Assembly (NCBI GenBank): GCA_965240325.2
Contig: OZ251224.1
Span: 3,224,001 to 3,288,000 of the forward strand
Direction of reading: 5' to 3'
Length of the DNA stretch: 64,000 nucleotides
Source of the DNA: Rebecca billardiae RCC1528
Taxonomy: Eukaryota > Protista > Haptophyta
Program-made: the position numbers and the translations under genes
Part shown: positions 46,401-64,000 of the stretch, piece by piece
Numbering within the stretch: position 1 is the stretch's first letter
Layout: each line of letters opens with the position of its first letter
Notes under the pieces: generated by a model
Told to the model about the DNA's origin: nothing
Database searches by the model: none
The model's input: only the letters and a program-made list of their open reading frames with translations

Positions 46401-47738
46401 GCCCTCGATCGATCGTCGATCGGACCGCGTGCGTGCGACTCCGTCCGCGCCCGCGCGCAGGGTGGGAGGGGCTGATGCAGGAGCAGATGCAGGACTACCT
46501 CGAAATTGCACGCGACGAGGAGGTGCTCAGCGCGCACTTTACGCTGCGCGCATCATCGAGTGGTCGCCCAGCGAGCGCGGGCAGCCACCGCCGCCGGCTG
46601 ACGGCGGGCGCAGCAGCGCAGCTGCCAGCTGCGGACGCGCAGCGGGCGCGGAGTGGAGGCCGGCGCGGCGGCCGGGCAGCGGCGGCCGGCGCGGCAGCAC
46701 GCTCGTATACATCGCGGCAGCTACCGCCGTCGTGCGGGGAAAGCACACGCTCTCGGCGGCTTCCAAGATGCCGACGGGCCACGGCGTGCAGGCTGCGTGC
46801 GCGCTGCAGTGGCTGTGTCGAGCTGCTGCGGCGTGTGCTCGAGGCGCGGCGCTCGCACGGGCTACGCGGGCGCAGCGGGTGCGCGCAGCTGGCGCACGCA
46901 GTACCACGTCCTGCGGCGCCAGTTTGGCGGCCGTCCGCCCCCCCGAGCTCGAGTTCTGCGCGCTTTGCGACGGCGCGGCCGGCCGCGCCCATCTGCCTGC
47001 TTGCTTGGGCACGCCAGCATGGCCGCCGCCGGGCCTGCTACGCGCGCCGAAGCTGGAGGGCGGAGGAGGGCGCTGGGCTGCTCCTACGGCGTGCTGCAGC
47101 CCGGGCAGGCTCTACCGCGGCGCGGCGAGGCCGTCGCGCCTGCTCGCCGCCGTCGAGTCGCCCGTGCTGCGTGACCCTCGGCCGCACGTGCTCGGCGGCA
47201 CCGCAGCAGGCGTCCCATACCACGGTATGCTCGAGCCGCTGTGCGCACCCAAGGCGCGAGCTGCTCGAGCGGGCCAGGTGGGCCCAGGGGGTGCGCGCAG
47301 CTGGCACACGCAGCCCCGCGTCATGGGGTGTCGGTTTGACGGTCGCCAGCCCCTGTGGGCTCGAGCGCTGTGCGCTTCACCACGGAGGTGCCGGCAGCGC
47401 CCCGCGGCGCGCAACGGCGGGGCAGCATGGCCGCCGCCGGCGCCGCCGCACATGCCGCCGCTTACGGGCAGTCGAGAGCTTGGGGCAGCACCTACGGCGC
47501 ATGCTGCAGCTCGGGCGGGCTCTGCCAGCCTGCTGTGGCGTGATCGCGCATTTTCCAGACCGTCGACTCGCCCGCGCTGCATAATATTCCATTATTCGTT
47601 TGCCGCGCGTGCTCGACGGCGCTCCGCGCTGCTGCTGCCGCTACGGCCGCGCGTTGGACGGACAGCATATGCCGACGGAGGGTGCACCGCGGGCCCCTAA
47701 CTACGTTGGTTCTATGGAAGGACCGCGGAACGCGGTCA
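43408..47738. mobile_element. Non-autonomous ~2.15-kb element, outer copy (43408-43807 plus 45993-47738), interrupted by a second copy
   Basis: The two pieces join into a sequence collinear with 43808-45992 and 58092-60272; flanked by A on the left and T on the right. Confidence 0.88.
43808..45992. mobile_element. Non-autonomous 2185-bp element, nested inner copy; Helitron2/Helentron-like architecture
   Basis: Terminal GGCCCGCGGTGCA (43809-43821) with a perfect inverted partner at 45937-45949; end hairpin GACCGCG-GAA-CGCGGTC (45975-45991); internal ~77-bp repeats; no transposase recognised. Confidence 0.85.
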
Positions 47739-47916
47739 TTATCAATTATCTGCCAACCGTATATATATATATACGGATTAGCAGCTGACGATGCGCTATT
47801 TGAAAATGCTAGCTAGCTTATAATGCAGTCTACATGCCGCTGAATCGCTGATAACTACACGTAGTCAGAGGCCGCCCGACTCGACAAGCGTCAATAATCA
47901 GACGTTCAGACGAGAA

Positions 47917-50421
47917 TCAGGCTCCTCGAAAGCTCTTGTGCTCCGAACATCGACGGGACGCGCGCTCGCTGATCTGCATGGAGCCGTGCACAACGTCGCC
48001 GTCGCTCTTGCGCACGGACACGAAGCGGTGACAATCGAGGAAGGTGATCTCGCACGTGGCGCCGACAAAGTTCGCGATGATGGTGTCGTCGCTGCCTTCC
48101 TTGGGCCTCCAATTCCCCGGCGCCCAGGGCGTGTGCAGCCGGCCATGGTCGAGGAACGCGATGGTGGGCACGCCCGCTGCGAGCGTGGCCGCGCGCGGGA
48201 GGGCGAAGGGCGCGTCGGCAATCACACGGCGTCACGCGAGCGGGTGTGAGCGTGCGGCGTGAGCACCCCGGCCCACCCACCCGCCGAGCCGTTCGGCGGC
48301 GCCGCTGCGCACAGCGGCACGGCGCCCGCGCGGCGCGCGCGCACCCCACGCCCACGGGCCAGTGCCGATGATGCGCTTGGCCACGGTCGAGCTCCACGCG
48401 CTGTCGGGCACGCCCTCGAGCTTGGGGTAGGCGACTGAGGCCATGCGCAACGTGTAGTGCGCGCCGCGCAGCTCGAGCGCGCCGTCGTCCGCAGTCGCGA
48501 GCTCGAGCTCATCGGTCCGGCAGAAGTGGAAGGTCAGCCCGGTGCCGGACGCCGAGGGCGCCCACGTGGCCGCGCCGATCGGAGTGATCGCTCGGCCCTT
48601 CTCAAAGAAGAAGAAGACGTTTGCGGCCGTGCCCCCCGTGTACTCGGGGCGCACGAGCTCCCACGGGCCCGCGCCCACGACCGAGCTGTACACCACAGAG
48701 CTCGTGTCGAACGGCGCCGGCCGCTGCCGCCGCGTCGTGTCGCGCGACGGGTCGACGGCGCTCTTGGTCCACGGCGGCGACGCAGCCGATGCCTCGTCAA
48801 AGAGGCGCGTGAGCACGTGCGCCGCCTCGTGTGCGCACTTGGGCGGCGGGCCGAAGGGGGTCGGGGGGAACCTGCCCATGAACTTGCGCTTGTCGAAGGA
48901 CCACTCGCCTTCCTGCCCCACCATCGGCAGCCCATCGAACGTGTACTCCAGCCCAAACTGTGCACACGCGCACGCCGCGCGGAGCAGAGCGGAGCGGCAG
49001 AGCGGAGCGGCAGGCGGGTGGCGCACACCAGGCGGGGCGCGCGTCAGCGCCGCTCACGTGACGCGTGGCGCGCACGCAGCACGGGGCGGCACACCGTGTA
49101 GTGGTAGATGTACGGCATCTCCGCCGTGATGTTCTGGTGCCACGTCGCGGCCGGCTCGATCTGCAGCTGCTGGATCACCTTGTGCTTCACCCCCAGCCGC
49201 GCGCACGTGATCGTGTAGCCCCACATCTCGAGGACCCAGCCGAACACACGGTCCGACTCCTGGTCGGCCTTGAGCTCGACGCTGAGCTCGTACCACATCT
49301 TGGTGATGTTGCGCAGCGTGGCGATGTGCAGGATGGCGGGCGACGGCCCGGTGGGCTGCACGTCCTTCCTCGGCCCGGCGTACCACTTGCCCACCACGCG
49401 CGGGTGGTCAGGCTGCTGCTCTGGCGACATGTATGGGAAGAAGAAGCCAGCCGCCTCGTCGCGGGTCGCAAGGTTGGGGATGGGCCTGAGCAGCAGGTGG
49501 TCACCCTCGAGGATGAGCACGTAGTCCTCCTTGATGCGCTCGTCCCACATGGCCGAGTGCATGAACGTGAGCACGCTCCACGGCCTGTTGATCACCTGGA
49601 AGCCGCGCGTCTTCTCCGAGCCGAGCTGCGGCGTCAAGTGGGTTGGCAGCAGGGCCATCAGGGCATCCGCCTTGCCGCCCGGCGACGCGAGCAGCCGCGT
49701 GATGGCGACCATGTCGGTGCAGTAGTCGGCCTTCTGCTGCTTGACTGCGGACGCGCGCGTGTGTTCGGGCGCGCCATCGGCCGGGCACGGACCACCGGCT
49801 CAGCCATGGGTGCAGCAGGGCGGGCGCCGCCGCGAGGGAGTGGGGCGCACAAAAGCGCAGCGAGGTCAGCGCACCAAAATGGTAATACGCTGCGTACGTC
49901 TGCCACTGCATGTACGGCCGATCTTGCACGGTCAGCAGCGAGTGGTACGGCCGCCGCTGAGGGCAATCGCGTGCGCGGATCTCGTCCTCGTCGATCACGC
50001 TCACGAAACCCTCGCGTGGGTAGCCAGCCACAGTGCTCGGCGCGCCGTCGTCCGACTTGGCGGCGCTGTGCACAGGACGCGAACTCGTGCTCGTCGCAGG
50101 GGTGCCGACGGTGGCGGGTTGGCTGGTGACAGCGGGTATGGGCGTAGTGGTGAGCGCCGATGCCGCAGGCGTGGGCTTCGGTCCTGCATCCTGCTCCGCC
50201 AGGCGCGCGAATGCCGCGCCCGGCGTGTTGTGGACAGCCGCCCCGGCTGGCGCTCGATTGAGCTGGAGCCAGCCGGCTGATCTGAGGTCGAAGAGCTGGT
50301 GCGTGTGGCGATGTTCCAGGTGCTGGTCCAGCCGGAGCACGTGCACGATCGAGAAGGCGAAAGCCAGGAGCAGGCTGACGGCTGCCACGGCGCCGAAGCG
50401 AGTGCCGCGAGAGGCGGACAT
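47917..50421 (-). CDS. HPAT: Hydroxyproline O-arabinosyltransferase-like (GT95) type II membrane protein; introns 49745-49874, 48958-49094, 48177-48344
   Basis: RPYHSLLT...YMQWQ...YYHF, VINRPW, IKEDYVLILEGDHLLLRP, FGWVLEMWGY, YHYTFG, WSFDKR; N-terminal TM anchor. Confidence 0.87.
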
Positions 50422-50613
50422 CGTGTGCGTTGGATCGAATATCCGTGGTTGTTGTTAGGGGTTGTTATTGGTCCATCAGCCTTTATTGGCGCATGGTCTT
50501 GATAGCCTGATGATAGAGTCGTGATAAGGTACTTTAGCTGGTCAGAACTTCAAACTCGTCAACTCGACGAGAAAGGCGCAGGTCCCGGCGCCATTCTCCT
50601 CGCTGCGAGGCGC

Positions 50614-51453
50614 ATGCTTTACGAGCTGAGCACGGGCACGCGTGCCCGTGTCGGCATCGAGCCTTTCTTCAGCTGGGCGCGGCTGGTGCGAGAATGTCTC
50701 GTGCTGGGATTCATCATCTCGTACATCATGATGTGCTTGCATTTCCTCACCGGCGCCGCCCCGCAAACGACCCTGGTCATGCAGCCCACTGCGGGTGCAG
50801 CTGCAAACGCCGAGCCATTCAGGCTACCCAAAGGAGCGTCGACCTGCGGGAACAGGCCTCGCGTGTACGTGCAGTGTGCACGGACCGGGCTGTACTGGAG
50901 GCTGAGCGATCGCGACGGCGTCATCGTCGCGGACGAGAGCCCACCCGAAACGCCGTTTCGAATCGAGCCGGTTTCTTCAGACGAGAGCACCAACGCCTCG
51001 TTCGCGATCCGGCATCTCTCGTCGCTGCAGCTGATCTCGGTGGTGCCACCAGGTGATCCAAACGCCTACGTGCTGCGGCTTGGCCCGCTGAGGCCGCGCT
51101 CAGCGCACGAGCTCTTCACCGTGCGCGGCGCGTCGCTCTGGAGCAACGGCGTCGGCTCGCTGATCAATCATCGGGAGCGGACCGCCGTGCGCGCGCACGG
51201 CAACACGGAGCCGTGGCAGCCGCTGACGGTCGAGACGTACAGCACGCGGGTCTACTTTCGCCTCCTGCCGTGCGACGACCCCTATGCCGTCGAGAATGCG
51301 CTCCTCGAGATGGTCGATCGTGGCGAAGGCGGGCTCCCTGCCTCAAAGCCAAATGGCGCTGGCGCGCGCAGCACCTCACGCTTCACACCTCCTGCGCGCA
51401 AGCGGCCGGCGTTTGGGCCACCCAGGGCGATACACAAGTCGATTCGAGGATAG
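50614..51453 (+). CDS. Hypothetical single-TM protein, possible beta-trefoil-like domain
   Basis: TM segment CLVLGFIISYIMMCLHF followed by a beta-rich region (VQCARTGLYW...FRIE...FAIRHLSS); start uncertain. Confidence 0.6.
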   Translation: MLYELSTGTRARVGIEPFFSWARLVRECLVLGFIISYIMMCLHFLTGAAPQTTLVMQPTAGAAANAEPFRLPKGASTCGNRPRVYVQCARTGLYWRLSDRDGVIVADESPPETPFRIEPVSSDESTNASFAIRHLSSLQLISVVPPGDPNAYVLRLGPLRPRSAHELFTVRGASLWSNGVGSLINHRERTAVRAHGNTEPWQPLTVETYSTRVYFRLLPCDDPYAVENALLEMVDRGEGGLPASKPNGAGARSTSRFTPPARKRPAFGPPRAIHKSIRG

Positions 51454-51777
51454 CCTGGTCGGGGGTTCGGCTGCGTCTGGGACGCGCGCGACGTGCTTCT
51501 GGGGTGAGCTGAGCGATCCGTAGCAGCCATTCATACCGTGGATGACCGCTCCAGTCTCTAGTCAGTGGCTCCGGTGCGCGCAGCTGACTGCAGAATCTCA
51601 GCAGAAGCCAGAACTGTGAGACTGGCGCCAGACTCCAGAGCCCATCGGACCGCTAACCGCCACTGCCGCCAGTCCGTTTCACTTTCATGCAGGCGTCTGA
51701 CGGTGACGACTCGAAGACTGCTGACGACTGCCGATATTAATCAGCAGTAGTTAACTGTAGTACTGTTAATAACGATG

Positions 51778-51782
<5 letters not shown>

Positions 51783-51833
<51 letters not shown>
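51783..51833. repeat. (TA)n microsatellite
   Basis: Pure TA run between convergent genes. Confidence 0.95.
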
Positions 51834-51836
<3 letters not shown>

Positions 51837-52090
51837 ATGAGTCTGAACGAGCGAGTGATGAAAATGTGATGATGGTGTCGCGCAGCATTGAAGTAAGAGT
51901 ATAGATTGAGCTCCGAGTCGCGAAGCGGAAAGCCGCAGCTCCAATCGCTCAGCAGCTGCTAGCTCTAGCCTCTAGGCGCCGCATCTCAGGCAGCGCAGCT
52001 GGGGTGCTCGGGCTCCGGCATGCGAAGTGCCGCTGACAGCCGCGCGCCGCTGCGAACCGCTCCCGACGGTCCACACCCAGCGCTGCGAAA

Positions 52091-54334
52091 TCACAGGATG
52101 AGCGCCTGCTTGTGCGCGGACACGGGCGTCACGTGCGACGGCGTGCGCACCGGCGTGGCGCGCCTCAAGTTGAGCAGCTCCTCGACGGCGTCCGCGTCGT
52201 GCTCCATGTGCCGCTTCGAGACGGGCGTGTGCACCATCTTCGTCGCGCCCGCGTCCACGCCGTCGCGCGTGTCGCTCCACGGCGTGCCCATGTCATACAC
52301 CTTGCTGCCGACCGGCGTGCTGCCCGGCGCGGAGGGGTACGGCTCGGTCGGCGGGGACATGACAAAGTGCGCGCCAGTCTCGTCGACGCGCACGCGCTTG
52401 GCCGCAGACTCCGGGGTGATCACGAGGTCCGGCGTGGACGTCCCGCGGATCGGCGTCTGGCCGATGCTGCTGAGCGCGACAGCCGCGTCGTCCGCGCGCG
52501 CGTCGCCGCCCCGCGGCGGCGTCGTGTGCCCCGCGCGCGCGATGTGCGCTCCGTAGTCGTAGTGCTCGTCGTCCGCGGCGCCTGAGCGGCGCGGCGCGCA
52601 GGCGGGAGCCGTGGGCGCGGGCGGCGCGCGTGAGCGGCACTCCCGGGCAGAGCGCGCGCTCGTTTCCCATGCGAGCGAGCGAGCCTGCGCGCGCGCGCGC
52701 GCGAGCGCGCACCGACGCTGCCGGAGACATCGGTGCTCTTGGGTCCGCTCGCGACCCCAACCAGCTCGCCGCCCGCCGCGGCCGCGGCGGCCGCCGCCTC
52801 GGCCGCAGCGCGCGCGCGCTTGCCCGCCGCCGAGCGCTTCTTGCGGATGGGCTGCTGCAGAGCGGCGAGATGGTCGGGGTGGACCGGGCCGATGTTTGGG
52901 TTCTCCGCCATCTGCCGCTGCAGCCGCCGGCGCACGGAGTTGTTCCAGTGGTTCTTCACCGCGTTGTCCGTGCGGCCGGGCAGCAGCCGAGCGATCTCAG
53001 CCCAACGGTTGCCCATCTGGCGGTGCGCGTTGATCAGCGTCTCGTCCTCCTCCGCGGTGAAGCTCTCCTTCCGGATCGACGGGTCGAGCTGGTTGTGCCA
53101 CCGCTCGCGGCACTGCTTGTTCAGCCGGCCCGGCAGGTGCGCGGCGATACGCGACCACTTGGTCGGGCCGAACTCGGCGACGAGCCGCGTGATCGTCGCG
53201 TCTTCCTGCGCGCGAGCGAGCGAGCGGCGTGGGCGGTGGAGGGCCACAGCCTCGCTCGTCAGCTCACGGCGGTGGCGCCGCGGCTCGGCACGGCGCGCGC
53301 GCGCCACAGCCGCGGGCGCGAGTGCAAGCCCGCTCGCACGCCGGCGCAGCCGGTGAGCGACGTCGGGGCGTGCGCCGCAGCGGCCGCGCACCTCGGGTGT
53401 CCACGGGCCCTTGATGCGGCTCGGGTCGAGCGCGCGGTTCCACCGATCGCGGCACTGCCACTCCGAGCGCTGCACGAGCTGCAGGGCCACCGCCTCCCAG
53501 TCCACCTCGTTCTCGCCGTACGTGGCCACGAGCTGCTTGAGCTTCTCGTCCTGCGAAGCACAGCAGCACGGCGCAGCGCAGCGCAGCGCGGCGCGGCGCG
53601 GCACGGAAGGCCATCACAGTCAGACACGGGCGCCGGGGGCGGGACGCGTCACGGCCGCGCCACGTCGGCGGCCGGGGTGCGAGGCCCGCGGGCAGCGGCA
53701 GCCCCAGCGTGCGGCCGCCCCGACGCGCGGCCGAGCGGGCGCGCACCTCCTCCGGCGACCACGCTCGCGGCCGCCACCGCGGCTTGCCCTTGCCCGAGAA
53801 CTTGGACACCTTGGAGGGCTTGCCATCGGCGGCGGGCGGCGCGGCGGGTGCGTCGGCGCTGCCGTCGGCGGGCTCCGAGCGGCCGTCGGGGTCTTCCTCG
53901 TCCTCCTCGTCCTCCTCCTCCTCCGCGTGCCGCGCCTCCTCCTGCGTCGCAAACTGGCTCGGGTGGTGCGTCACGAACTCGCTCCGGTGCGTCGCGAACT
54001 CGCCCGGGTGCGCGTGCTCCTCGAGCGGGGTCTCGGCGGCCGGGGTGTCTGTCAGGTTCTCATCAGCAGCGCTGTGCGGTGGGCGCAGACGCGGCGCGGG
54101 TGCGTGGGGCGCAGGCGGTGAGCGGCGAGGCCAGCGATGGCTTGGGTGGATTCGATGGCGCCTGGAAGCTGCGCGCGTGCCCCCGCGCGCAGCACACGCC
54201 CCCCGTCGCCCACCCTTTGCCTGTGGGCGCGCAGCCGTACGGGCGAGCACGGCAATTTGCATGCGAGCGCACCTCAGATCGAAGTCATGCTCGGGCACAT
54301 CGACGTATTCGTCGAAGGTGAAGCTGCGGGGCAT
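52091..54334 (-). CDS. MYB3R: Three-repeat MYB (R1R2R3) transcription factor; introns 54072-54272, 53551-53746, 53206-53391, 52582-52712
   Basis: Spliced repeats AWSPEEDEKL...QCRDRW, KGPWTPEED...KQCRERWHNQLDP, FTAEED...GNRWAEIARLLPGRTDNAVKNHWN; C-terminus rich in TP sites. Confidence 0.9.
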
Positions 54335-56290
54335 GATACTGGGTGTGTTGGGGACGCGCGCGCGCCGTCGGTGTCAGCCGAGGGCGCCGGCACGCCCGGG
54401 CGCGAGCCCATCTCCCGAGGCGCTAAACAGGGCTGCTCACCTGCGGCTCGCCGACACCAGATTGTCGGGCGCACGGGCCATCTCCGGCGGCGATCTGCGC
54501 GGGCAACGCGACCGGGGTTGGAGGGTCAGCGCGGAGCCCCGAGCCCCACGCGCCGCGTGCGCTCCGTCCCCCGCGCCCGCGCACCCGTCGAGGTAGTACA
54601 TCGGGCAGCTGTGCCCACAGCAGTGGTTAGGCTCGTGAAAGGGCTGGCACGCTCTGGCCCGGTTCGGGTCAGCCGAGCAAGGGCCAACGGCGGTAGGCCC
54701 TTTTCGGCCGCAACGGGTGGTGCGTGCTTACGCCCGCTCAGATGCGGCAGCGGGCGCGGCTTCGCGAGGGGTCGCGAGGCCGCGCGAGTCTGTTGCGCAA
54801 CTTACAAACTGTCGGCGACGAGGGAGTCTGAACCGGAACGGCACGCGTGGTTGACGTAACCGGCCAGTGGTCCGGATGAATCTCCGACTGGTGCTTCCGG
54901 ACTTCTCACCGAGAAGCGCCGGAACGGCGGAACCGGCAGCCGCGCCGGCCCGGCCTCTCTCGGCCGGCGCGTGGTCACGGCGCTGTCCGCCCCGGATCGG
55001 GCGGTGCTCACGTCACCGGCCCGGCTCGATGACGAGCGCCGTCTTGCCTTTACGCGACCAGCGAAGACGATCCGCCAGCTTGTCCCACCGATGCCAGCCA
55101 CGCGGCGCTACTCCCTCAGCGCCGCGCGGCGCGGGCCAAGACGACTTGTGTCATCCTCAGCCATAGCCAGATGCGCTACGCACATGTTTCGTGCGGGCCG
55201 GAGCCCGGAGGGCCGGCCCACACCCGTAGAACGGGAGTCCACTGGCATTCGGCTGAGCGGAGTGATGGACGTGATCGTCAACTGGTGCACGCGACTCGCT
55301 TACCTTCGAGGCGAGCTTGTCACGGTGGCCGTGATTGATAGCTCCGCACAGCATCATGTAGCAAGCACAGACGCGCAGACCACTGCGCACGCCCTCTCCT
55401 TTTCCACATCGGCGCCGGCAGTAATGGACTCAGCTGAGGCTCCACCACGGCGCCGACTCGGCGACTCTTCCTCTGCGGGCTGGGCCGACGTGCGATGATG
55501 CATCATGATGATGACGCCGCTAGATCTGCGGAGATGCATCACAAGAACTCGGATTGCTGAATCTGTCGAGCAGACTTATCTGAGACACTCACTAGCTGAG
55601 TACAGTAGAAAGTATAGTAGTAGTATGCGACAGTAGTGAACACCATCCGAAGCTCAAGTCATCCGGCCGCGCACCGCGCGAACCGGAGTGCCATCAATCC
55701 CGCGGCGCGCAGTGGCTACGTGATGGCCGGCCTCAGTAGAGCTCGTCGAAGCTGCTGCTGAGCTCAACGCGTCGCTGCGGTGCGCAGGAGGCGGGGCTGT
55801 GGACGAGCTCGGCAGCGGCATCAGGCTCAGCTGAGCATTTTGCCGTCTCTCAGCGGGCTTGCTGATGAGCGCTAGCTGCGCCCGAGACCATCCGCTGGGG
55901 TGAGGGCGGCGGCTGCCTCCCAGCTGTTGCTGCTCGTCACGTCTGTGAGCCCGGGGTACCTCGGCGCCCAGTTCACGCCCGTGGCTAGCGGCCCTGAGCG
56001 CGAGCGCATCTCCGTCAGGAATGGCCGCTGCGCTACTACGCTGGTCGGAGCGCTTGTCTCAGCCTCGTCACGACATGTTTGGCCGCTTGACGCCTCGGTG
56101 GCCATCAATACGACGCGCACGAGTGGCAGCGGTATTAAGCTGACGCCGCTGGACGCATGCGCCGTTTACATCCTGGGCATCAACGTGGAGCTGCGCGTCA
56201 GCTTCGCTCGAGCTGACAAGTCCGCCATGCTGTACTGTAAGCACTGTACCTCCCTCGGCTCAACTTTGATGCTTGGGGATTCCACCGCAG

Positions 56291-56340
56291 TAATCTCGCC
56301 TGCCTGAGCTGTGTGCGTCTCTTATTCTTAGTAAACTGTA
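56291..56340 (-). repeat. 50-bp dispersed element, family 2 (inverted copy)
   Basis: Reverse complement is 50/50 identical to 41530-41579; ~210 bp upstream of the F-box ATG. Confidence 0.92.
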
Positions 56341-56552
56341 GCGCGAGCAGACGTTTTGTATCACCCAAAGCAAGGAGACTTTAAAAAACCACACCCCTTG
56401 CCCAAAGAAGCGTTTTCCCGGTCCGCTACAGATACGGTTTAGAAGATCGAAACGCCCAGTCTGAATCGGCCGCAAAGTTTGTGGCTGAACCGCCTTCGTC
56501 GCTCGGCGGGACCAAACCTCACGAACGCCGCGCCGTCGCCCTCCGTGCGGGC

Positions 56553-57476
56553 ATGTCGTCCCTCGAGTCCTTGCCGCTCGAGCTGCAGGCAGAGGTTTGC
56601 GCGCTGCTGGACGACAAGTCGCTGTGCAAGCTGGCCGGAGCGAGCCGCACGACCAACACCACCGTACACCTCCAATGGGAGTCGCGCTTCGCCACGTCGA
56701 TCGGGGATGCCGCCTCCTTGCGAGCGGCTGACGTCTCGCTGGGCGACACCTTCGTGAGCTCGTGCACCGGGGAGCGCCTGCTGCAGCGCCTGGGGAAGCT
56801 GGGTACGAGGAAGTCGCTATGCCTGTGGGTGAAGGTCCTGTGCGCCATGTGCAACGACGGCTCCTACATCTCGGGTCGGCCGCGCCTTTTTGGCGCGGAG
56901 CTGTACGGGGAGATCGCGCGCAAGCACGGCTGGCGGAAGCTGTACGAGACGGTGCACCGGCGGACGTGCGCCGACTGTGGCGTGGCGACCGCGCTTGTCC
57001 ACGTCCAGACGTGCAAGCGCGTGTGCCAGGGCTGCTTCGCTTCCAACGGCCCGAAGCGCCTATCGAGCGATCCGGCGGAGAACGGTCTGGAGGCACTCGG
57101 CGTCTGGTTTGACTGCGCACAGGTGCCTGGCCACAGGAAGCCACTACGGGGCTGCGTCACGTCTGAGCACGCCACGCATCGGGCCACCAGCCAGAAGGTG
57201 CGCAAGGATGACGTGGACGACATCAAGCTCGACGCTCTCTCGCTGAGTGACTGCGAGCCGAAGCGGTTCAAGCACCGGCGCATGCACTCGCCAAGCTGCT
57301 CCAACGGCATGCGCGCGCGCGCGCACCTCGCAACGAGTCCAGTGGTGCCCCTGTGCCGTGCCCTTGCGGTCGGCGGCAAAATGCTAGCTGCTCAGAACGC
57401 ACCCGCGCTCATCCTCTGGGGACCGCAGGCGCACGTCGACGAGTGGGAGGCAGGCTGCAGCGCGCCTTCGTGCTGA
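56553..57476 (+). CDS. F-box protein with a CxxC...CxxC zinc-binding motif
   Basis: N-terminal LESLPLELQAEVCALLDDKSLCKLAGASR...W; CADC...CKRVCQGC. Confidence 0.72.
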   Translation: MSSLESLPLELQAEVCALLDDKSLCKLAGASRTTNTTVHLQWESRFATSIGDAASLRAADVSLGDTFVSSCTGERLLQRLGKLGTRKSLCLWVKVLCAMCNDGSYISGRPRLFGAELYGEIARKHGWRKLYETVHRRTCADCGVATALVHVQTCKRVCQGCFASNGPKRLSSDPAENGLEALGVWFDCAQVPGHRKPLRGCVTSEHATHRATSQKVRKDDVDDIKLDALSLSDCEPKRFKHRRMHSPSCSNGMRARAHLATSPVVPLCRALAVGGKMLAAQNAPALILWGPQAHVDEWEAGCSAPSC

Positions 57477-57897
57477 TGCCGATGGTGGCGTCAGCTGGCT
57501 CAGCTGCTCGTCAGTTTCGAATGCCATCTTGAGTCTGACGACGACTCCGACGACGGCGGCAAAGTACAGAATCGACGATGACGATCGCGAAGTGCAAGAG
57601 AGGGAGAGACGAGAGAGAGAAAGAGATCAGAGAGAGATCGACGAGAGAGAGAGGCGGACTTAAGCTAAGCTAATCCGCGAGCCCGAGGGCGGCCGGCCGA
57701 GCAGGCGAGCTACGGACGACTCAGACTGTGTAGATAGACGGTACGTAGTCTGTAGAGTGTCAGACGAGACTGAGACTGAGTGAGCCATCAGAGAGACAGA
57801 GAGTGAATATAGTGTCTTAGTGATACAGTAAAAGTGACTGCCGACGACAATGGGTGCGATATGGGCATGGCCTGAGAGACTGACGAATATGATCTGA

Positions 57898-57936
<39 letters not shown>

Positions 57937-57948
57937 GGGGCGTTGCGC

Positions 57949-60403
57949 CAAGGGGCTTACAAAATACCACTGGGGGCGAAACACAGCTGTCGGATGAGAT
58001 GTACATGAGACGGAAAGTGTCCGGTCAGCGGAAAACACTGTGCGAGAAGTTTGAATCCGGGAAAGCGGGTAGATCTGTCGTGACCTCATCATGGCCCGCG
58101 GTGCAGGGCGGAGCGCGTAGCGTGGAGCCCCGCCGGGGGCCCTCACTACGTTGTCAAAAAGATCTTTTGATCAAAGAAAAGGGGATGGGGGACGATTTTG
58201 AGGGCTGTTGGAGGGTGAGTTTTCGACTTTTTGAGGGGGGTATGCTGTCCATCACAGCTTAAAAGGCCGCGCCCGCTGCAATTCTTGTATCTACTATGGA
58301 CGGACGTGGGATCAGATACCCCGGGGGTGAAACAAGTGAGTATTCCTATCCCTCTTGTATGCTGAAGTACGAGTTTGCCGAGCGACGTTTGATTGTTTTG
58401 GGTCGAAAACAGCTATGAAGCCAGATTCTTTTGAATAGTGCTTGTTCAAATACGTTACCCGTCTGTCTCGATGGATGAACCGCCTCGTCATATTAAAAGA
58501 GATTCTTTTCAATAGCGCTTGTCCAACCAAGTTACCCGCCTGCCTCGATGGACGAACCTCCTCATAATATTGAAAGAGATTCTTTTGAATAGCGCTATTT
58601 AAAGCCAGTTACCCGCTTGCCTCGATGGATGAACCTCGTCCTGTACTCCTGTGCCATAAGTCCATAATGAAAGAGAGGCGCTTGTGAAAACAGGTTACCC
58701 GCCCGCCAGCGTTTATTGCGGGAGGCGCGACACGCCCGAGGCAGCGGGCGAGGATGCCGTGCAAAGGCGTGCGCGCCGCGCCGGTGCCCTCGCGCCGGTG
58801 GCGTGGGCTGGCTGGCTGCTGGTCTCGCCCACGCGCCCCACTCGCCCCAAGCGCGCAACGCCTGCGGGAAGCGCCGGCACCATACCTAACTAACCTGCGC
58901 GTCGACGCCCGTCCTGCCGCGGCCCGCGCCCTCTGATCGATCGTCGATCGGACCGCGTGCGTGCGACTCCGTCCGCGCCCGCGCGCAGGGTGGGAGGGGC
59001 TGATGCAGGAGCAGATGCAGGACTACCTCGAAATTGCACGCGACGAGGAGGTGCCCAGCGCGCACTTTACGCTGCGCGCATCATCGAGTGGTCGCCCAGC
59101 GAGCGCGGGCAGCCGCACCGCCGCCGGCTGACGGCGGGCGCAGCAGCGGCGCAGCTGCCAGCTGCGGACGCGCAGCGGGCGCGGAGTGGAGGCCGGCGCG
59201 GCGGCCGGGCAGCGGCGGCCGGCGCGGCAGCACGCTCGTATACATCGCGGCAGCTACCGCCGTCGTGCGGGGAAAGCACACGCTCTCCGCGGCTTCCAAG
59301 ATGCCGACGGGCCACGGCGTGCAGGCTGCGTGCGCGCTGCAGTGGCTGTGTCGAGCTGCCTGCGGCGTGTGCTCGAGGCGCGGCGCTCGCACGGGCTACG
59401 CGGGCGCAGCGGGTGCGCGCAGCTGGCGCACGCAGTGCCACGTCCTGCGGCGCCAGTTTGGCGGCCGTCCGCCCCCCCGAGCTCGAGTTCTGCGCGCTTT
59501 GCGACGGCGCGGCCGGCCGCGCCCATCTGCCTGCTTGCTTGGGCACGCCAGCATGGCCGCCGCCGGGCCTGCTACGCGCGCCGAAGCTGGAGGGCGGAGG
59601 AGGGCGCTGGGCTGCTCCTACGGCGTGCTGCAGCCCGGGCAGGCTCTACCGCGGCGCGGCGAGGCCGTCGCGCCTGCTCGCCGCCGTCGAGTCGCCCGTG
59701 CTGCGTGACCCTCGGCCGCACGTGCTCGGCGGCACCGCAGCAGGCGTCCCATACCACGGTATGCTCGAGCCGCTGTGCGCACCCAAGGCGCGAGCTGCTC
59801 GAGCGGGCCAGGTGGGCCCAGGGGGTGCGCGCAGCTGGCACACGCAGCCCCGCGTCATGGGGTGTCGGTTTGACGGTCGCCAGCCCCTGTGGGCTCGAGC
59901 GCTGTGCGCTTCACCACGGAGGTGCCGGCAGCGCCCCGCGGCGCGCAACGGCGGGGCAGCATGGCCGCCGCCGGCGCCGCCGCACATGCCGCCGCTTACG
60001 GGCAGTCGAGAGCTTGGGGCAGCACCTACGGCGCATGCTGCAGCTCGGGCGGGCTCTGCCAGCCTGCTGTGGCGTGATCGCGCATTTTCCAGACCGTCGA
60101 CTCGCCCGCGCTGCATAATATTCCATTATTCGTTTGCCGCGCGTGCTCGACGGCGCTCCGCGCTGCTGCTGCCGCTACGGCCGCGCGTTGGACGGACAGC
60201 ATATGCCGACGGAGGGTGCACCGCGGGCCCCTAACTACGTTGGTTCTATGGAAGGACCGCGGAACGCGGTCATATTCTTCCCAGGCATTCCTGTGTTTTC
60301 CTCATACGAGCTCCCGGACACTTTCCGTCTCATGTACATCGCATCCGACGGGGCTCCTCACTGGCGCTTTCGCCCCCAGTGGTATTTTGTAAGTCGCCCC
60401 TTG
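57949..60403. mobile_element. P-element-like MITE (~274 bp: 57949-58091 plus 60273-60403) with 7-bp TSD, interrupted by the 2.2-kb element
   Basis: Long imperfect TIRs (CAAGGGG...TTACAAAATACCACTGGGGGCGAAA...GATGTACATGAGACGGAAAGTGTCCGG); GTTGCGC duplicated at 57942-57948 and 60404-60410. Confidence 0.82.
58092..60272. mobile_element. Third, uninterrupted 2181-bp copy of the non-autonomous element
   Basis: Nearly identical to 43808-45992, with the same ends (A|TGGCCC...GCGGTCA|T). Confidence 0.9.
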
Positions 60404-60589: not shown

Positions 60590-60770
<181 letters not shown>

Positions 60771-60823
60771 GAGAGTGAGATATGGTTGTCATCGAGTCGA
60801 TCATCAGCCATCAGGCTTCGTCA

Positions 60824-61996
60824 TCAACTAGTCGTTACATCATCCACATCATCATTATCGTCTCCACCGCCTGCTGCACGCGCACGCGTGTTGAGCTCGC
60901 CAAAGTACGCCATGATAGCCTTCGGCCGCCCGTTGAGCACGCAGCTCTCCACCTCGACCGAAGCTCGCCAACGCTTTCCCTGCATGCCGCCCATCTGTGA
61001 CAGCTGCAGGTCATCGGCCGTGCGGGGGAGATAGTAGCCCACGTGCGGTGTGATGCCTAGCGCCAAGCGCAGCAGCTCGAAGCCGTCGAGGCCGCCCATC
61101 TGGCGCGCATCGAACGACTCGGCGTCTTGGTAGCTCGGGCCACCCCACGGCGGCGACAGGAAAACCACATCCGCGCGCAGCCTGGGTGCAAGGGCGGTGA
61201 AGTCACCGTGGATGAACTCGATGCGATCGGCAACACCGTACACGCGCGCGTTGTCTCGCGTGAGCTGCAGCCTGTGCAGGTCGATGTCGATGGCGACGAC
61301 GCGCTCGCACATCATCGCGAATTGAATCGCATTCCCACCCACGCCCGCAAACGGGTCGAGCACCAGATCGCATTGGCATCGGTGCGCGATGTGCCGCGCG
61401 AGCCGCTCAGGCGTGACTGAGAACCAGCCCTCCTCGTCCATCCGGATGCCATCGTCAAACCGCGACCAGAGCGAGTAGCGCTGCGGCCAGTACTTGCCCG
61501 CCGCTGCCGCAGCGGGCGTAGGGGCCGCAGCCTCGGCGGGCGCGTCCTCTCGCTGTGCCGGTGGCAGCTCGGCACGCGCCGAGTCGCGCTCGTCCAGAGC
61601 TGACGCGTGGCTCCCTGCGGCGAGAGTCAGCTCCCAGTTGCCCGCAACATCAATGAGCATCGCGTCTGACGAGCGTAGCTGGGCCAGCGAGATCGTGCCG
61701 TCAGCCGTGCAAAGCCCTTGGACGAAGAGCCCGTTCTGTTTGGCGTCGCACGCGACCAGCGTGCCCGACACTCGCGTCTGGTCGTGCATGAGGACATCCA
61801 CGCGTGAGCCCATGATCTTCCGCCAGACATCCAGCGTGCGAATGCGCTGGCGCCCGCGCGAAGCCTGGCCCTGCGCATCCTCTGCTCGCCTTCCGCTCGG
61901 GGCCAGGCCTGCCTCTGCCCGGGCGTGAGCCTCCGGCTTGGCCAGGCCCCCATCACGCATTGTCCGACGCGTGTGATGCACGGCGCAGTCCGACAT
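60824..61996 (-). CDS. TGS1: Trimethylguanosine synthase with an N-terminal Gemin7-like Sm-fold domain
   Basis: KYWPQRYSLWSRFDDG, EGWFSVTPE, DPFAGVGGNAIQFA, VFLSPPWGGP; N-terminal GSRVDVLMHDQTRVSGTLVACD...FVQGLCTADGTISLAQLRSSD. Confidence 0.92.
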   Translation of the reverse strand: MSDCAVHHTRRTMRDGGLAKPEAHARAEAGLAPSGRRAEDAQGQASRGRQRIRTLDVWRKIMGSRVDVLMHDQTRVSGTLVACDAKQNGLFVQGLCTADGTISLAQLRSSDAMLIDVAGNWELTLAAGSHASALDERDSARAELPPAQREDAPAEAAAPTPAAAAAGKYWPQRYSLWSRFDDGIRMDEEGWFSVTPERLARHIAHRCQCDLVLDPFAGVGGNAIQFAMMCERVVAIDIDLHRLQLTRDNARVYGVADRIEFIHGDFTALAPRLRADVVFLSPPWGGPSYQDAESFDARQMGGLDGFELLRLALGITPHVGYYLPRTADDLQLSQMGGMQGKRWRASVEVESCVLNGRPKAIMAYFGELNTRARAAGGGDDNDDVDDVTTS

Positions 61997-62231
61997 GCTG
62001 GACGTCGTCGGCGTCCTTTCCAGCCAGGAGCTTTTTTACTTTTTGACGATCCTCGGATTGTCGTCAATGGCAATGGCCGCCCGGCGGCTTGTTCATCAGC
62101 TTGCCGGTGGTCCTGCGTGTGACCCTACTGTAGCTCCATTTTCTGACCAGTCCGTCCTCTCGGCGTGCCGGCGCGCGGAGCATGCAGTCTAGCGACGTTG
62201 CAGGAGGCATGCGGTACATTCGAGATGTCCT

Positions 62232-64000
62232 TCAAGGCGGCGCGAATTGAAGGCTGGATGACGGCGCGGAGGCGACGCCGTGGGGGTGCAGGTAGGGCGC
62301 CGAACGAGACACACCTCGGGCGCGGCGGCGACGACCACCGACGATGGCGGGTGGCTTGGCGCGCTTTCCGCCGAGCTTATGGCCGCCATGCTCACACGGC
62401 GTCGTGTGCGGAGCTGTCGTTCCGCACGCGATGGCGTCGACGGCCGCTGGTGGCTGCAGCTGCAGCGATTCGCGATCGTGTGCGGCCGAGGTAGCCGCAA
62501 TGTCGCACTCGCCGCGGGTGTCCACAGCAGAGGCCGTGCCCCAGTCGAAGGCCGCCGGGTCTGGCTCGAGGCTGTACAACTCGGCCATGTGCCCGTCCCG
62601 AGCGAGTGCCTCCGCCATCGTCACCGAGGACGGCTGGCACGTCACAGCCCACTCCGGCAGCGGCGACTCGTCACAGCGCGCCTTCTTGCTCGCGCGGGCA
62701 TGCCCGGGCATGCCGAACGGCGCGCTGCTGCACTGCGCGATTCCTCTCACGAGGCGCTTCGGCCTGAGGGCGGCGCCCTTGTCTGACCCCTCGTGCGCGC
62801 GATGGACTCGCGATGTCGAGCCCTCGCTCGTCGCGAGCGCGCCCGATGCCGAGCTGTGCGCGTAGGCTGTCGTGCACGGCCCGTCGTGCAGCAGCGTGAG
62901 CAGCGTGCGCCCCTGCGAGCGCGTCTTGAAGTCGAGCTGCAGGGAGCCCGCGATCTTGCGCTCGGCAACGGGCGCAAACCGCTCGCCGAGGTTGTTGTTC
63001 AGCGCGCGAAGTGCGCAGGGTGCCTTGGTCACCGACGCATCTGGCGGGCGCAGCTCGCCTGCCGCCTGAAGCACCTCTGCGCCCGCGTGCCGGGCCACAC
63101 CACCAGCGTCGGCCGCGGGCTGATGGCTGTAGTCGGCCTGCGAGTCAGTGAAGACGTCGTCGAAGAGGTTGATGGGCACGAGGAGCTCGTCGTCATGCGA
63201 CAGCTGCTCGCACGCATCCGTCGCCGCCTCGGCGAGCGCGGTGGCGAGAAAGTCGTAGTCGTCGAATTCATCCGCGATTGGATGATGGCGGCTGCTGGTC
63301 CCGCGCAGCAGGCTGTCCATGAATTCGACGCCCCACGAGAGAAGCTCAGCCTCGTCGTCAGCCGTGGTGTCGGCGGCGAGTGTCTTCCCGTCAACGGACG
63401 CGGCCTGCGTATCGTCTGGCTCGAGTCGCACGCCGTCCGTGTCGTCGTCGATCACCCTGGCTGCAATCGTCACGGGCACCTCCGGCGGCGTGGGAGCCGC
63501 GGCCTCGGCGGTGGTTGGGAACGATGCGGTGCGCGCCGTGTCGCCGGGCTGCGCAGAGGTGGACGGCTCCTCGACGGCAGATGGTGGAGAAGGAGCGAGC
63601 GCGTGAGCTCGTGGCGGGGACGGCTCGAGCGTGGGCTCGGCGTCATCTTCGTCCGGAGTGGGCAGATCTCCGCCCGTGGCGGCGGTGGGAGAGACGAGGG
63701 GCTGGTCCATTGCATCGCCCGGCGCGTTGCTCTCGACGTCAAATGCGCTGCCGAGCGCGCGCCGAGTCGAGCCAGCGCTGCCGGACGCGGACGCAGGCAT
63801 CTCTTCGGCGGGATTCCCTGTGGCCTCCGCATCAGCCGGCTCGCCGGGCTGTGGCAGCGCGTCTGGTGCGTTCAACGGCCGGCGGAGCGGCGGGGGCTCA
63901 GTCGGCGGCGCGTTCCCGAGCGCGCTGGGCGTGCGAACGCCTGGCTTCTCGGCCGGCGGGAGCGCCGCGCCGGGCTGGGATGTGAGCACGGCAGCGGCGA
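62232..64000 (-). CDS. Hypothetical low-complexity acidic/Pro-rich protein, 5' end probably outside the window
   Basis: Open frame of at least 585 codons running to the window edge; no family recognised. Confidence 0.55.
   Translation of the reverse strand, partial: AAAVLTSQPGAALPPAEKPGVRTPSALGNAPPTEPPPLRRPLNAPDALPQPGEPADAEATGNPAEEMPASASGSAGSTRRALGSAFDVESNAPGDAMDQPLVSPTAATGGDLPTPDEDDAEPTLEPSPPRAHALAPSPPSAVEEPSTSAQPGDTARTASFPTTAEAAAPTPPEVPVTIAARVIDDDTDGVRLEPDDTQAASVDGKTLAADTTADDEAELLSWGVEFMDSLLRGTSSRHHPIADEFDDYDFLATALAEAATDACEQLSHDDELLVPINLFDDVFTDSQADYSHQPAADAGGVARHAGAEVLQAAGELRPPDASVTKAPCALRALNNNLGERFAPVAERKIAGSLQLDFKTRSQGRTLLTLLHDGPCTTAYAHSSASGALATSEGSTSRVHRAHEGSDKGAALRPKRLVRGIAQCSSAPFGMPGHARASKKARCDESPLPEWAVTCQPSSVTMAEALARDGHMAELYSLEPDPAAFDWGTASAVDTRGECDIAATSAAHDRESLQLQPPAAVDAIACGTTAPHTTPCEHGGHKLGGKRAKPPAIVGGRRRRARGVSRSAPYLHPHGVASAPSSSLQFAPP

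What the first reader, a model, noticed from the sequence alone, without database searches (positions are those of the whole stretch)
60824..61996. Gemin7-like domain fused to trimethylguanosine synthase TGS1
Seen: one intronless ORF. The N-terminal ~75 aa (~61864-61643: RQRIRTLDVWRKIMGSRVDVLMHDQTRVSGTLVACD...FVQGLCTADGTISLAQLRSSDAM) follow the Gemin7 pattern (G.qV...l.e...V.a.f.a.D....f.V..L.Tp.G....A.LR.sD). An Ala/Pro linker joins this to a complete TGS1 methyltransferase. Known: Gemin7 is an Sm-like subunit of the SMN complex, and TGS1 hypermethylates snRNA caps after Sm-ring assembly and associates with SMN. Inference: a Rosetta-stone fusion hard-wiring cap trimethylation into the SMN complex via Gemin6/7/8. 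I know of no report of it.
Basis: partly seen in the sequence, partly recalled or inferred. Interest (0 to 1): 0.82.

Follow-up and report, generated by a model that had tools for sequence, protein, structure and literature searches.

The report
Gemin7–TGS1 fusion gene in haptophytes
This haptophyte-type alga has one gene that joins Gemin7, a small subunit of the SMN snRNP-assembly complex, to TGS1, the enzyme that trimethylates snRNA caps; the same fusion occurs across haptophyte algae and I found no paper describing it.

Summary
Window 60824-61996 (-) is one uninterrupted 390-codon ORF. Residues 44-116 are a true Gemin7 domain: Pfam PF11095 scores 46-49 bits against a cut-off of 25. A profile of the domain hits human Gemin7 in the PDB at E 2e-14, while Sm D1 scores about E 1. 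The AlphaFold model's best match is human Gemin7 (TM 0.74-0.78). Residues 167-371 are a complete TGS1 catalytic domain (E 1e-71 and Z 28 to human TGS1, cofactor and cap motifs intact). A disordered Ala/Pro linker joins the two.

The same architecture occurs in about 30 protein clusters at 39-58% identity. These include Diacronema lutheri, Pavlovales sp. and Prymnesium parvum, so both haptophyte classes are covered. Their TGS1 domains form one supported clade. Outside this group, Gemin7 is a stand-alone protein of 70-200 aa in animals, Amoebozoa, Rhizaria, euglenids and streptophytes.

Residues matching the human Gemin7 contacts with Gemin8 are conserved. The likely role is therefore to tether the cap hypermethylase covalently to the SMN/Gemin6-8 module. 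That role is inferred. I could not check whether haptophytes have Gemin6, Gemin8 or SMN, nor get transcript or protein evidence. The sequences are public under automatic names, but I found no paper on the fusion. It is a new variant of known parts, of moderate interest.

The parts
60824..61996 (-). Whole ORF: 390 codons plus a TGA stop at 60824-60826, intronless. The start is ATG 61996; a second ATG at 61960 (M13) is the start used by the database gene call P0001.
   Evidence: Orthologues conserve residues upstream of M13, which favours M1.
61931..61987 (-). Conserved N-terminal motif (aa 4-22, consensus t..L.D..GL), predicted as a beta-strand (aa 5-13, pLDDT about 80). Its role is unknown. 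Some structural alignments suggest that it packs against the methyltransferase domain.
   Evidence: 30% mean pairwise identity against 13% in the next segment; methyltransferase alignments whose model range starts at residues 2-12.
61649..61867 (-). Gemin7 domain (aa 44-116): an N-terminal helix followed by a five-stranded Sm-like sheet.
   Evidence: Pfam PF11095, 46-49 bits. Profile against the PDB: human Gemin7 at E 2e-14. AlphaFold pLDDT 91. Foldseek top hits are 1y96_B and 7bbl_D. ESM Atlas top hit is a Gemin7 cluster, TM 0.82 by the query.
61607..61648 (-). Extension after strand beta5 that is specific to the fusion family (aa 117-130; G.W.L in the window, G.W.LS.PLP..P in prymnesiophyte-type members). 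Human Gemin7 ends just after beta5 and has no such extension.
   Evidence: The Trp is 96% conserved in fusion proteins against 23% in stand-alone Gemin7.
61499..61606 (-). Ala/Pro-rich linker (aa 131-166), predicted to be disordered. The segment between the two domains varies from 47 to 145 residues among orthologues.
   Evidence: pLDDT below 50 for aa 132-156; 18% mean pairwise identity and the range of lengths.
60884..61498 (-). TGS1 cap guanine-N2 methyltransferase domain (aa 167-371). It includes the N-terminal KYW.QRY..W.RFD extension, motif I (V.D.F.GVGGN) and motif IV (SPPWGGP).
   Evidence: PF09445, 134.6 bits. Human TGS1 3gdh at E 1e-71. Structural match Z 28.0, rmsd 2.0 A, 206 residues aligned, 57% identity. 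The motif residues are invariant in alignment A1.
60827..60883 (-). Short acidic C-terminal tail (aa 372-390), not conserved and modelled with low confidence.

Best explanation
This is a single, intronless, protein-coding gene of a haptophyte-type alga. Its product has four parts in order: a short N-terminal strand, a canonical Gemin7 (Sm-like) domain, a flexible linker, and a complete and apparently active TGS1 cap guanine-N2 methyltransferase. The fusion arose before the Pavlovophyceae and Prymnesiophyceae diverged and has been kept under purifying selection. Shown: the identity of the domains, their continuity in one frame, their conservation and their phyletic pattern. Inferred: the Gemin7 domain still does what Gemin7 does elsewhere. 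Its N-terminal helix would bind the C-terminal helices of Gemin8, and its beta5 edge would pair with Gemin6. That would place TGS1 on the SMN complex as a covalent subunit. A newly assembled Sm-class snRNP would then have its m7G cap converted to the 2,2,7-trimethylguanosine cap on the same machine that closed the Sm ring, without the non-covalent recruitment of TGS1 by SMN described in animals. I put the probability that the fusion gene is real at about 0.95, and the probability that it works by docking to SMN/Gemin6/8 at about 0.55-0.6.
For: One ORF with an in-frame stop just upstream, and the same codon-position GC pattern in both domains. Gemin7 by Pfam at 46-49 bits against a cut-off of 25, with LSM below its cut-off. 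The family profile hits human Gemin7 at E 2e-14; the next hits are RimP at 0.046 and Sm D1 at about 1. The domain model has pLDDT 91 and its best structural matches are human Gemin7 in the Gemin6/7 and Gemin6/7/8 crystal structures, at TM 0.74-0.78 and rmsd 1.8-1.9 A; Gemin7 clusters also come first in the ESM Atlas. TGS1 is complete, with intact motifs. About 30 orthologue clusters share the architecture, including D. lutheri, Pavlovales sp. and P. parvum. Their TGS1 domains form a clade with 96-97% support. Every hit above 95 bits in the exhaustive search with the Gemin7-domain profile is a fusion protein or a fragment of one; lower hits are stand-alone Gemin7 from very diverse eukaryotes. 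The equivalents of the human Gemin7 residues that contact Gemin8 are kept: R63 as R in 27 of 28, L67 as L in 27 of 28, L70 as W in 25 of 28, and F92 as a hydrophobic residue in 28 of 28. Per-column conservation in fused domains tracks that in 123 stand-alone Gemin7 proteins (Spearman 0.76). The literature says the SMN complex recruits Tgs1 in the last cytoplasmic step of snRNP assembly (PMC5463183) and that Gemin8 bridges Gemin6/7 to SMN (PMC8287938).
Against: There is no transcript or protein evidence for this organism; no RNA run was listed. I could not test whether haptophytes encode Gemin6, Gemin8, SMN or Gemin2, or whether they also have a stand-alone Gemin7. Three of the eight human Gemin8-contact positions (Q56, A60, L71) vary among the fusion proteins, and L97 is replaced by small residues (A in 20 of 28, otherwise G or S). 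The stand-alone set used for the conservation comparison was picked with the fusion-derived profile, which inflates the correlation. The fusion-specific extension after beta5 and the N-terminal strand could change or block the Gemin6-pairing edge. Cleavage in the linker, or internal initiation, cannot be excluded: the window has M113, and P0009 has a Met just before the KYW motif.
Confidence: 0.58

Rival explanations
1. The fusion is real, but the Gemin7-like domain works independently of an SMN/Gemin6/8 complex. It might act as an Sm-fold module that binds Sm proteins or the open Sm ring directly, or it might self-associate. It would then replace the Sm-binding N-terminal regions of other TGS1 proteins as the device that targets the enzyme to its substrate.
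For: Gemin6/7 have been proposed to stand in for the SmB/D3 dimer on the Sm ring (PMC5463183). The domain has a good Sm fold. The fusion family has features of its own: the extension after beta5, the near-invariant Q46, Y61 and W80 of the profile, and an N-terminal strand. Nothing here shows that haptophytes have Gemin6 or Gemin8.
Against: The helix alpha1 residues that contact Gemin8 in the human structure are among the best conserved in the domain, and they match the consensus of stand-alone Gemin7. That is hard to explain if the Gemin8 partner had been lost.
Confidence: 0.3
2. The fusion is a gene-model artefact. There are two separate products: either translation of TGS1 starts downstream of the Gemin7 part, or two transcripts exist, and the open frame between them is an accident of a GC-rich genome.
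For: GC-rich DNA gives long chance ORFs; several overlap nearby. No RNA evidence was available. One database gene model (P0027) starts at a Met just before the TGS1 domain in a related species.
Against: A Gemin7 product could not terminate, because no stop follows the domain in the window ORF or in any of the 28 aligned orthologues. The window has no Met between M113, which lies inside the Gemin7 domain, and the conserved start of the TGS1 domain. Domain order, frame and a conserved N-terminal motif are kept across sequences only 39-58% identical. The codon-position GC pattern is the same in both parts. Independent gene calls on metagenome, Logan and NCBI contigs give the same two-domain protein.
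Confidence: 0.04
3. The N-terminal domain is a generic Sm/LSm domain, or a chance resemblance, and not Gemin7.
For: The LSM family gives weak hits at 12-16 bits. Many Sm/LSm structures match the model at TM about 0.6.
Against: Gemin7 scores well above its Pfam cut-off while LSM is below its own. The profile hits human Gemin7 at E 2e-14 against about 1 for Sm D1. Gemin7 ranks first by Foldseek and in the ESM Atlas. The family signature residues (R10, L14, W17, D43, L54, T56, P57, G59, A64, R67 and D70 of the profile) are shared with stand-alone Gemin7 proteins.
Confidence: 0.02

Closest known systems
Gemin7 (human GEMIN7, S. pombe Gem7; Pfam PF11095; PDB 1Y96 and 7BBL)
   Same: Same family by sequence profile and by fold: an N-terminal helix plus a five-stranded Sm-like sheet. 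The signature residues are shared, including the equivalents of human R63, L67, L70 and F92 that contact Gemin8.
   Different: Known Gemin7 proteins are small stand-alone proteins of about 70-200 aa that end just after strand beta5. Here the domain sits inside a 390-aa enzyme. It is followed by a conserved Trp-containing extension and a linker, and preceded by a conserved N-terminal strand. Binding to Gemin6 and Gemin8 was not shown.
TGS1 / Tgs1 trimethylguanosine synthase (human TGS1 catalytic domain, PDB 3GDH and 3EGI; Pfam PF09445)
   Same: 57% identity over 206 structurally aligned residues with the human catalytic domain (Z 28). The cofactor-binding motif (GVGGN) and the cap-binding motif (SPPWGG) are intact, and the N-terminal extension of the active form is present.
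   Different: In the tree, the TGS1 relatives outside the fusion clade, apart from P0069, show no Gemin7 domain in the precomputed Pfam list or against the family profile. In animals TGS1 is recruited to SMN non-covalently; here a subunit of the SMN complex is part of the same polypeptide.
Non-covalent recruitment of TGS1 by the SMN complex in animals (Mouaikel et al. 2003, as cited in PMC5463183)
   Same: The same two functions are brought together: Sm-core assembly machinery and cap hypermethylation.
   Different: In animals the link is a protein-protein interaction with SMN. Here the link would be covalent and would go through the Gemin6/7/8 arm of the complex.

Membership tests
Gemin7 (PF11095) | Scores above the curated Pfam gathering threshold. 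| tested here: met
   46.0-48.8 bits against a cut-off of 25, covering profile positions 3-75 of 76.
Gemin7 (PF11095) | Sm-like fold, N-terminal helix plus five-stranded sheet, closest to solved Gemin7 structures. | tested here: met
   AlphaFold pLDDT 91; helix 3-20 and five strands. Foldseek ranks 1 and 2 are 1y96_B and 7bbl_D, TM 0.74-0.78, rmsd 1.8-1.9 A. A Gemin7 cluster is first in the ESM Atlas, TM 0.82/0.87.
Gemin7 (PF11095) | Closer to Gemin7 than to canonical Sm/LSm proteins. | tested here: met
   The profile of 28 fusion domains hits human Gemin7 at E 2e-14, and Sm D1 at E 0.6-1.4. Pfam LSM scores 12-16 bits, below its cut-off of 23.4.
Gemin7 (PF11095) | Gemin8-binding surface on helix alpha1 (human Q56, A60, R63, L67, L70, L71, F92, L97; PMC8287938). 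| tested here: inconclusive
   The equivalents of R63, L67, L70 (as Trp) and F92 (hydrophobic) are conserved in 25-28 of 28 sequences. L97 is replaced by small residues (A in 20 of 28, otherwise G or S). Q56, A60 and L71 vary. This fits retained binding but does not show it.
Gemin7 (PF11095) | Forms a heterodimer with Gemin6 and is part of an SMN complex. | not testable with these tools
   No haptophyte proteome or whole genome could be searched for Gemin6, Gemin8 or SMN, and no multimer modelling was available.
TGS1 cap guanine-N2 methyltransferase (PF09445) | Scores above the curated Pfam threshold over the whole domain. | tested here: met
   134.6 bits against a cut-off of 22, covering profile positions 2-164 of 165.
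TGS1 cap guanine-N2 methyltransferase (PF09445) | Homology to the solved active catalytic domain, including its N-terminal extension. | tested here: met
   3gdh_A at E 9.6e-72, chain residues 33-236 of 241. Structural Z 28.0, 206 of 209 residues aligned.
TGS1 cap guanine-N2 methyltransferase (PF09445) | Cofactor-binding motif I and cap-binding motif IV (SPPWGG) are intact. | tested here: met
   D214, F216, G218, G220, G221, N222 and S281 through P287 are invariant columns in the 29-sequence alignment and are present in the window protein.
TGS1 cap guanine-N2 methyltransferase (PF09445) | Converts m7G caps to m2,2,7G caps. | not testable with these tools
   This needs an enzyme assay.

The most novel reading that the evidence does not exclude
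In haptophytes the fused copy is the only Gemin7. Every SMN/Gemin6-8 unit then carries its own cap hypermethylase, and one machine performs both Sm-ring assembly and TMG capping. That would point to an old functional link between the poorly understood Gemin6/7/8 arm of the SMN complex and TGS1, one that may exist non-covalently in other eukaryotes, and it would give a direct experimental handle on what Gemin6/7 do.
Probability: 0.3. Interest if true: 0.7.

Novelty: new variant of a known kind. Interest (0 to 1): 0.55.

Why it matters
Conserved gene fusions are among the more reliable genomic pointers to proteins that work together. TGS1 is known to be recruited by the SMN complex, but the role of the Gemin6/7/8 arm is still debated; proposals include release of ICln and standing in for SmB/D3. 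A whole algal phylum that has welded Gemin7 to TGS1 suggests that one job of this arm is to position the cap hypermethylase. That can be tested in haptophytes, and also in yeast or human cells by asking whether Gemin6/7/8 contribute to TGS1 recruitment. For annotation, these proteins are currently named only 'trimethylguanosine synthase' or 'hypothetical protein', and their Gemin7 part is not named.

Tried and rejected
RNA evidence: the look-up of sequencing runs listed no RNA run for this stretch.

Transcript-like contigs: the orthologue contigs I fetched are genomic or metagenomic, with several genes per contig or no poly(A) end. They do not count as transcripts.

ESM Atlas search by sequence features on the Gemin7 part gave only low-score, unrelated clusters.

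Word-index search with the Gemin7-domain profile found 4 short proteins: two ant Gemin7 and two fragments. It missed stand-alone Gemin7 proteins that the exhaustive search later found, so its silence about a stand-alone haptophyte Gemin7 means little.

A tree of the Gemin7 domains alone (89 columns) was unresolved, and I draw nothing from it.

Single origin including the divergent member P0069: the best tree puts P0069 outside the haptophyte clade, but the AU test does not reject one clade (p 0.17). The question stays open.

I could not obtain a Gemin6, Gemin8 or SMN query sequence from any tool, and I did not type one from memory. Their presence in haptophytes was therefore not tested.

I could not measure contacts of the N-terminal strand or of the extension after beta5.

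The neighbouring ORFs 62235-63989 (-), 59649-60116 (-) and 58957-60231 (+) have no Pfam match.

Full report
WHAT IS THERE

Window 60824-61996 on the minus strand is one open reading frame of 390 codons ending in TGA. A TAA at 62036-62038 lies in frame 14 codons upstream of the first ATG, so the frame cannot be extended 5' without an intron. A second ATG at codon 13 is the start used by the database gene call P0001 (378 aa). Orthologues conserve residues upstream of that position, so the first ATG is the better start. GC content by codon position is 0.66/0.47/0.81 in the Gemin7 part and 0.67/0.45/0.82 in the TGS1 part. This is the same coding signature in the same frame.

THE TWO DOMAINS

Pfam places Gemin7 (PF11095) at aa 44-116 with 46.0 bits in the whole protein and 48.7-48.8 bits in N-terminal pieces, against a curated cut-off of 25. 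The generic LSM family reaches only 12-16 bits against a cut-off of 23.4. The window domain alone is a weak match to human Gemin7 in the PDB (E 0.05). A profile of 28 orthologous domains (alignment A2) hits human Gemin7 chains 1y96_B and 7bbl_D at E 2e-14 over almost their whole length; the next hits are RimP at 0.046 and Sm D1 at about 1. AlphaFold2 on A2 gives a confident model (pLDDT 91) with one N-terminal helix and five strands. Its two best Foldseek matches are human Gemin7 in the Gemin6/7 and Gemin6/7/8 crystal structures (TM 0.74-0.78, rmsd 1.8-1.9 A, 28% identity), ahead of Sm and LSm proteins at TM about 0.6. The best ESM Atlas match is also a Gemin7 cluster (TM 0.82/0.87).

The C-terminal part is a complete TGS1. 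PF09445 scores 134.6 bits. Human TGS1 3gdh matches at E 1e-71, and the match includes the N-terminal extension of the active form. The structural match is Z 28.0, rmsd 2.0 A, with 206 of 209 residues aligned at 57% identity. The motif I and SPPWGGP residues are invariant in the family alignment. Between the domains lies an Ala/Pro-rich segment with pLDDT below 50. Among orthologues this segment varies from 47 to 145 residues and is only 18% identical on average.

IS IT ONE GENE?

No RNA run was listed for this stretch, so the case is comparative. A word-index search found the same two-domain architecture in about 30 protein clusters at 39-58% identity to the window protein. They include Diacronema lutheri KFE25_008864, Prymnesium parvum AB1Y20_020167 and Pavlovales sp. 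KAJ1624616.1, plus many proteins from marine and freshwater metagenomes. They align end to end. Mean pairwise identity is 40% in the Gemin7 domain, 35% in a short extension after it, 66% in TGS1, 30% in a short N-terminal motif, and 13-18% in the spacers. That pattern is what purifying selection on a translated multi-domain protein looks like. No stop separates the domains in the window ORF or in any of the 28 aligned orthologues, and 11 of those 28 have no Met between the end of the Gemin7 domain and the start of TGS1. In the window, the only Met in that interval (M113) lies inside the Gemin7 domain. Independent gene calls on unrelated contigs give the same protein, also without introns. One database model (P0027) that lacks the Gemin7 part is simply a call that starts at a Met just before the TGS1 domain of a P0009-like gene. 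I rate the chance of a gene-model artefact at about 0.04. Cleavage in the linker or internal initiation cannot be excluded.

DISTRIBUTION

In a tree of 119 TGS1 domains, the fusion proteins fall into one clade with 97% local support, and the window protein is sister to the Pavlovales-type sequences. A 68-row IQ-TREE analysis agrees (96% SH-aLRT). An earlier agent of this scan called the genome a haptophyte-type alga, and my tree agrees. Because both haptophyte classes have the fusion, it most likely predates their split.

Two outliers exist:
- P0026 has only a weak Gemin7-like N-terminus (24.8 bits against the family profile) and sits inside the clade.
- P0069 comes from a freshwater eukaryotic MAG. 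It has a clear Gemin7 domain (57 bits) but lacks the family-specific N-terminal and post-beta5 motifs, and it falls outside the clade. The AU test does not reject one clade (p 0.17). Whether it marks a second fusion event or a wider distribution is open.

An exhaustive HMMER search of 1.84 billion representative proteins with the A2 profile found 632 proteins at E up to 0.001. Every hit above 95 bits is a fusion protein or a fragment of one. Lower hits are stand-alone Gemin7 proteins of about 70-200 aa. The named ones come from Euglena longa, Phalansterium, the foraminifer Nonionella, Mesostigma, insects and a nematode. Gemin7 is therefore old and is normally a stand-alone protein, and the fusion to TGS1 is specific to this lineage. 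None of the 20 stand-alone representatives I looked up was named as a haptophyte. Most carry no name, so a second, stand-alone Gemin7 in haptophytes is not excluded.

HOW IT PROBABLY WORKS

Established background: Gemin8 bridges the Gemin6/7 dimer to SMN. It binds the N-terminal helix of Gemin7 through human residues Q56, A60, R63, L67, L70, L71, F92 and L97, while Gemin7 strand beta5 pairs with Gemin6 strand beta4 (PMC8287938). SMN/Gemin6-8 can release ICln from the Sm pentamer (PMC13249430). The SMN complex recruits Tgs1 in the last cytoplasmic step of assembly, and the TMG cap together with the Sm ring forms the nuclear import signal (PMC5463183).

In the fusion family, the equivalents of R63 (R in 27 of 28), L67 (L in 27 of 28), L70 (W in 25 of 28) and F92 (hydrophobic in 28 of 28) are conserved. 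L97 is replaced by small residues (A in 20 of 28, otherwise G or S). Q56, A60 and L71 vary. Per-column conservation of the fused domains correlates with that of 123 stand-alone Gemin7 proteins (Spearman 0.76), with the same consensus residues at the strongest positions. The caveat is that the stand-alone set was selected with the fusion-derived profile.

My reading is that the domain still docks to Gemin8 and Gemin6 and so makes TGS1 a covalent subunit of the SMN complex, coupling Sm-core assembly to cap hypermethylation. This step is inferred. The main rival, which I put at about 0.3, is that the Sm-fold domain targets TGS1 to Sm proteins directly, or self-associates, without an SMN complex.

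UNEXPLAINED FEATURES

- The conserved N-terminal motif (aa 4-22) is predicted as a strand with pLDDT about 80. Several structural alignments of methyltransferases to the full model begin at residues 2-12. This hints that the strand packs on the catalytic domain and leaves the Gemin7 domain as a tethered loop-out.
- The Trp-containing extension after beta5 is 96% conserved in fusion proteins and 23% in stand-alone Gemin7. It lies next to the edge that should pair with Gemin6.
- I could not inspect model coordinates.

NOVELTY

Searches of about 8.4 million papers and preprints found nothing that combines Gemin7 with haptophyte names and nothing describing a Gemin7-TGS1 fusion. The proteins are public, named automatically as 'trimethylguanosine synthase' or 'hypothetical protein', and carry both Pfam hits in precomputed tables. 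The architecture can therefore be seen in databases but has not, as far as I can see, been described. Both parts and their functional link are known, so I class it as a new variant of a known kind. Interest is moderate (0.55): it is a clean, phylum-wide Rosetta-stone fusion that points specifically at the Gemin6/7/8 arm.

LIMITS

- There is no transcript or protein evidence.
- Haptophytes were not tested for Gemin6, Gemin8, SMN or Gemin2.
- The taxa behind P0069 and P0026 are unknown.

Noticed in passing
window 60591-60780: A 190-bp (GA)n/(CT)n microsatellite (96% matches) starts 44 bases downstream of the stop codon, probably in or just after the 3' UTR of the fusion gene.
   Followed up: partly
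protein P0037 (EukProt, GILK01007126.1): A transcriptome-derived protein whose TGS1 domain is sister to the haptophyte fusion clade has a different architecture: TGS1 (aa 208-360), a PHAX RNA-binding domain (aa 372-449, 63.7 bits) and an SDE2 C-terminal domain (aa 517-578). PHAX is the snRNA export adaptor, so this may be a second fusion within the snRNA biogenesis pathway. It could also be a chimeric transcript.
   Followed up: partly
proteins P0154, P0156, P0160 (metagenomic): The best-scoring stand-alone Gemin7 proteins (153-197 aa) share a conserved N-terminal motif that looks like a C2H2 zinc finger (C..C...F.....L..H.....H) ahead of the Gemin7 domain. Pfam reports only Gemin7.
   Followed up: no
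L001 6001-7377 (protein P0069; MAG GCA_977009605.1): A divergent Gemin7-TGS1 fusion with a 119-aa N-terminal extension, lacking the haptophyte-type flanking motifs. It is intronless and lies next to an apparently intronless 4676-aa dynein heavy chain gene in a freshwater lake metagenome. Its TGS1 domain falls outside the haptophyte clade; the organism is unknown.
   Followed up: partly
proteins P0148, P0155, P0194: Bacterial proteins of 1333-3007 aa matched the Gemin7 profile through 13-21 repeated partial stretches of about 30 residues. P0148 and P0194 are Ig/cadherin-like repeat proteins by Pfam, and P0148 reaches 89 bits on Pfam Gemin7 in this way. These are false positives to watch for in domain surveys.
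   Followed up: yes
window 58750-60250: A stretch of about 1.5 kb at 72-77% GC carries overlapping long ORFs in several frames on both strands. The ORFs tested have no Pfam match. Another first-stage note places a repeated mobile element across 43408-60272.
   Followed up: no
L004 1322-1888 and L005 1556-2140: In two Pavlovales-type contigs the fusion gene is followed on the same strand by an ARPC4 gene. The window has the microsatellite and the GC-rich repeat region in that position instead.
   Followed up: no
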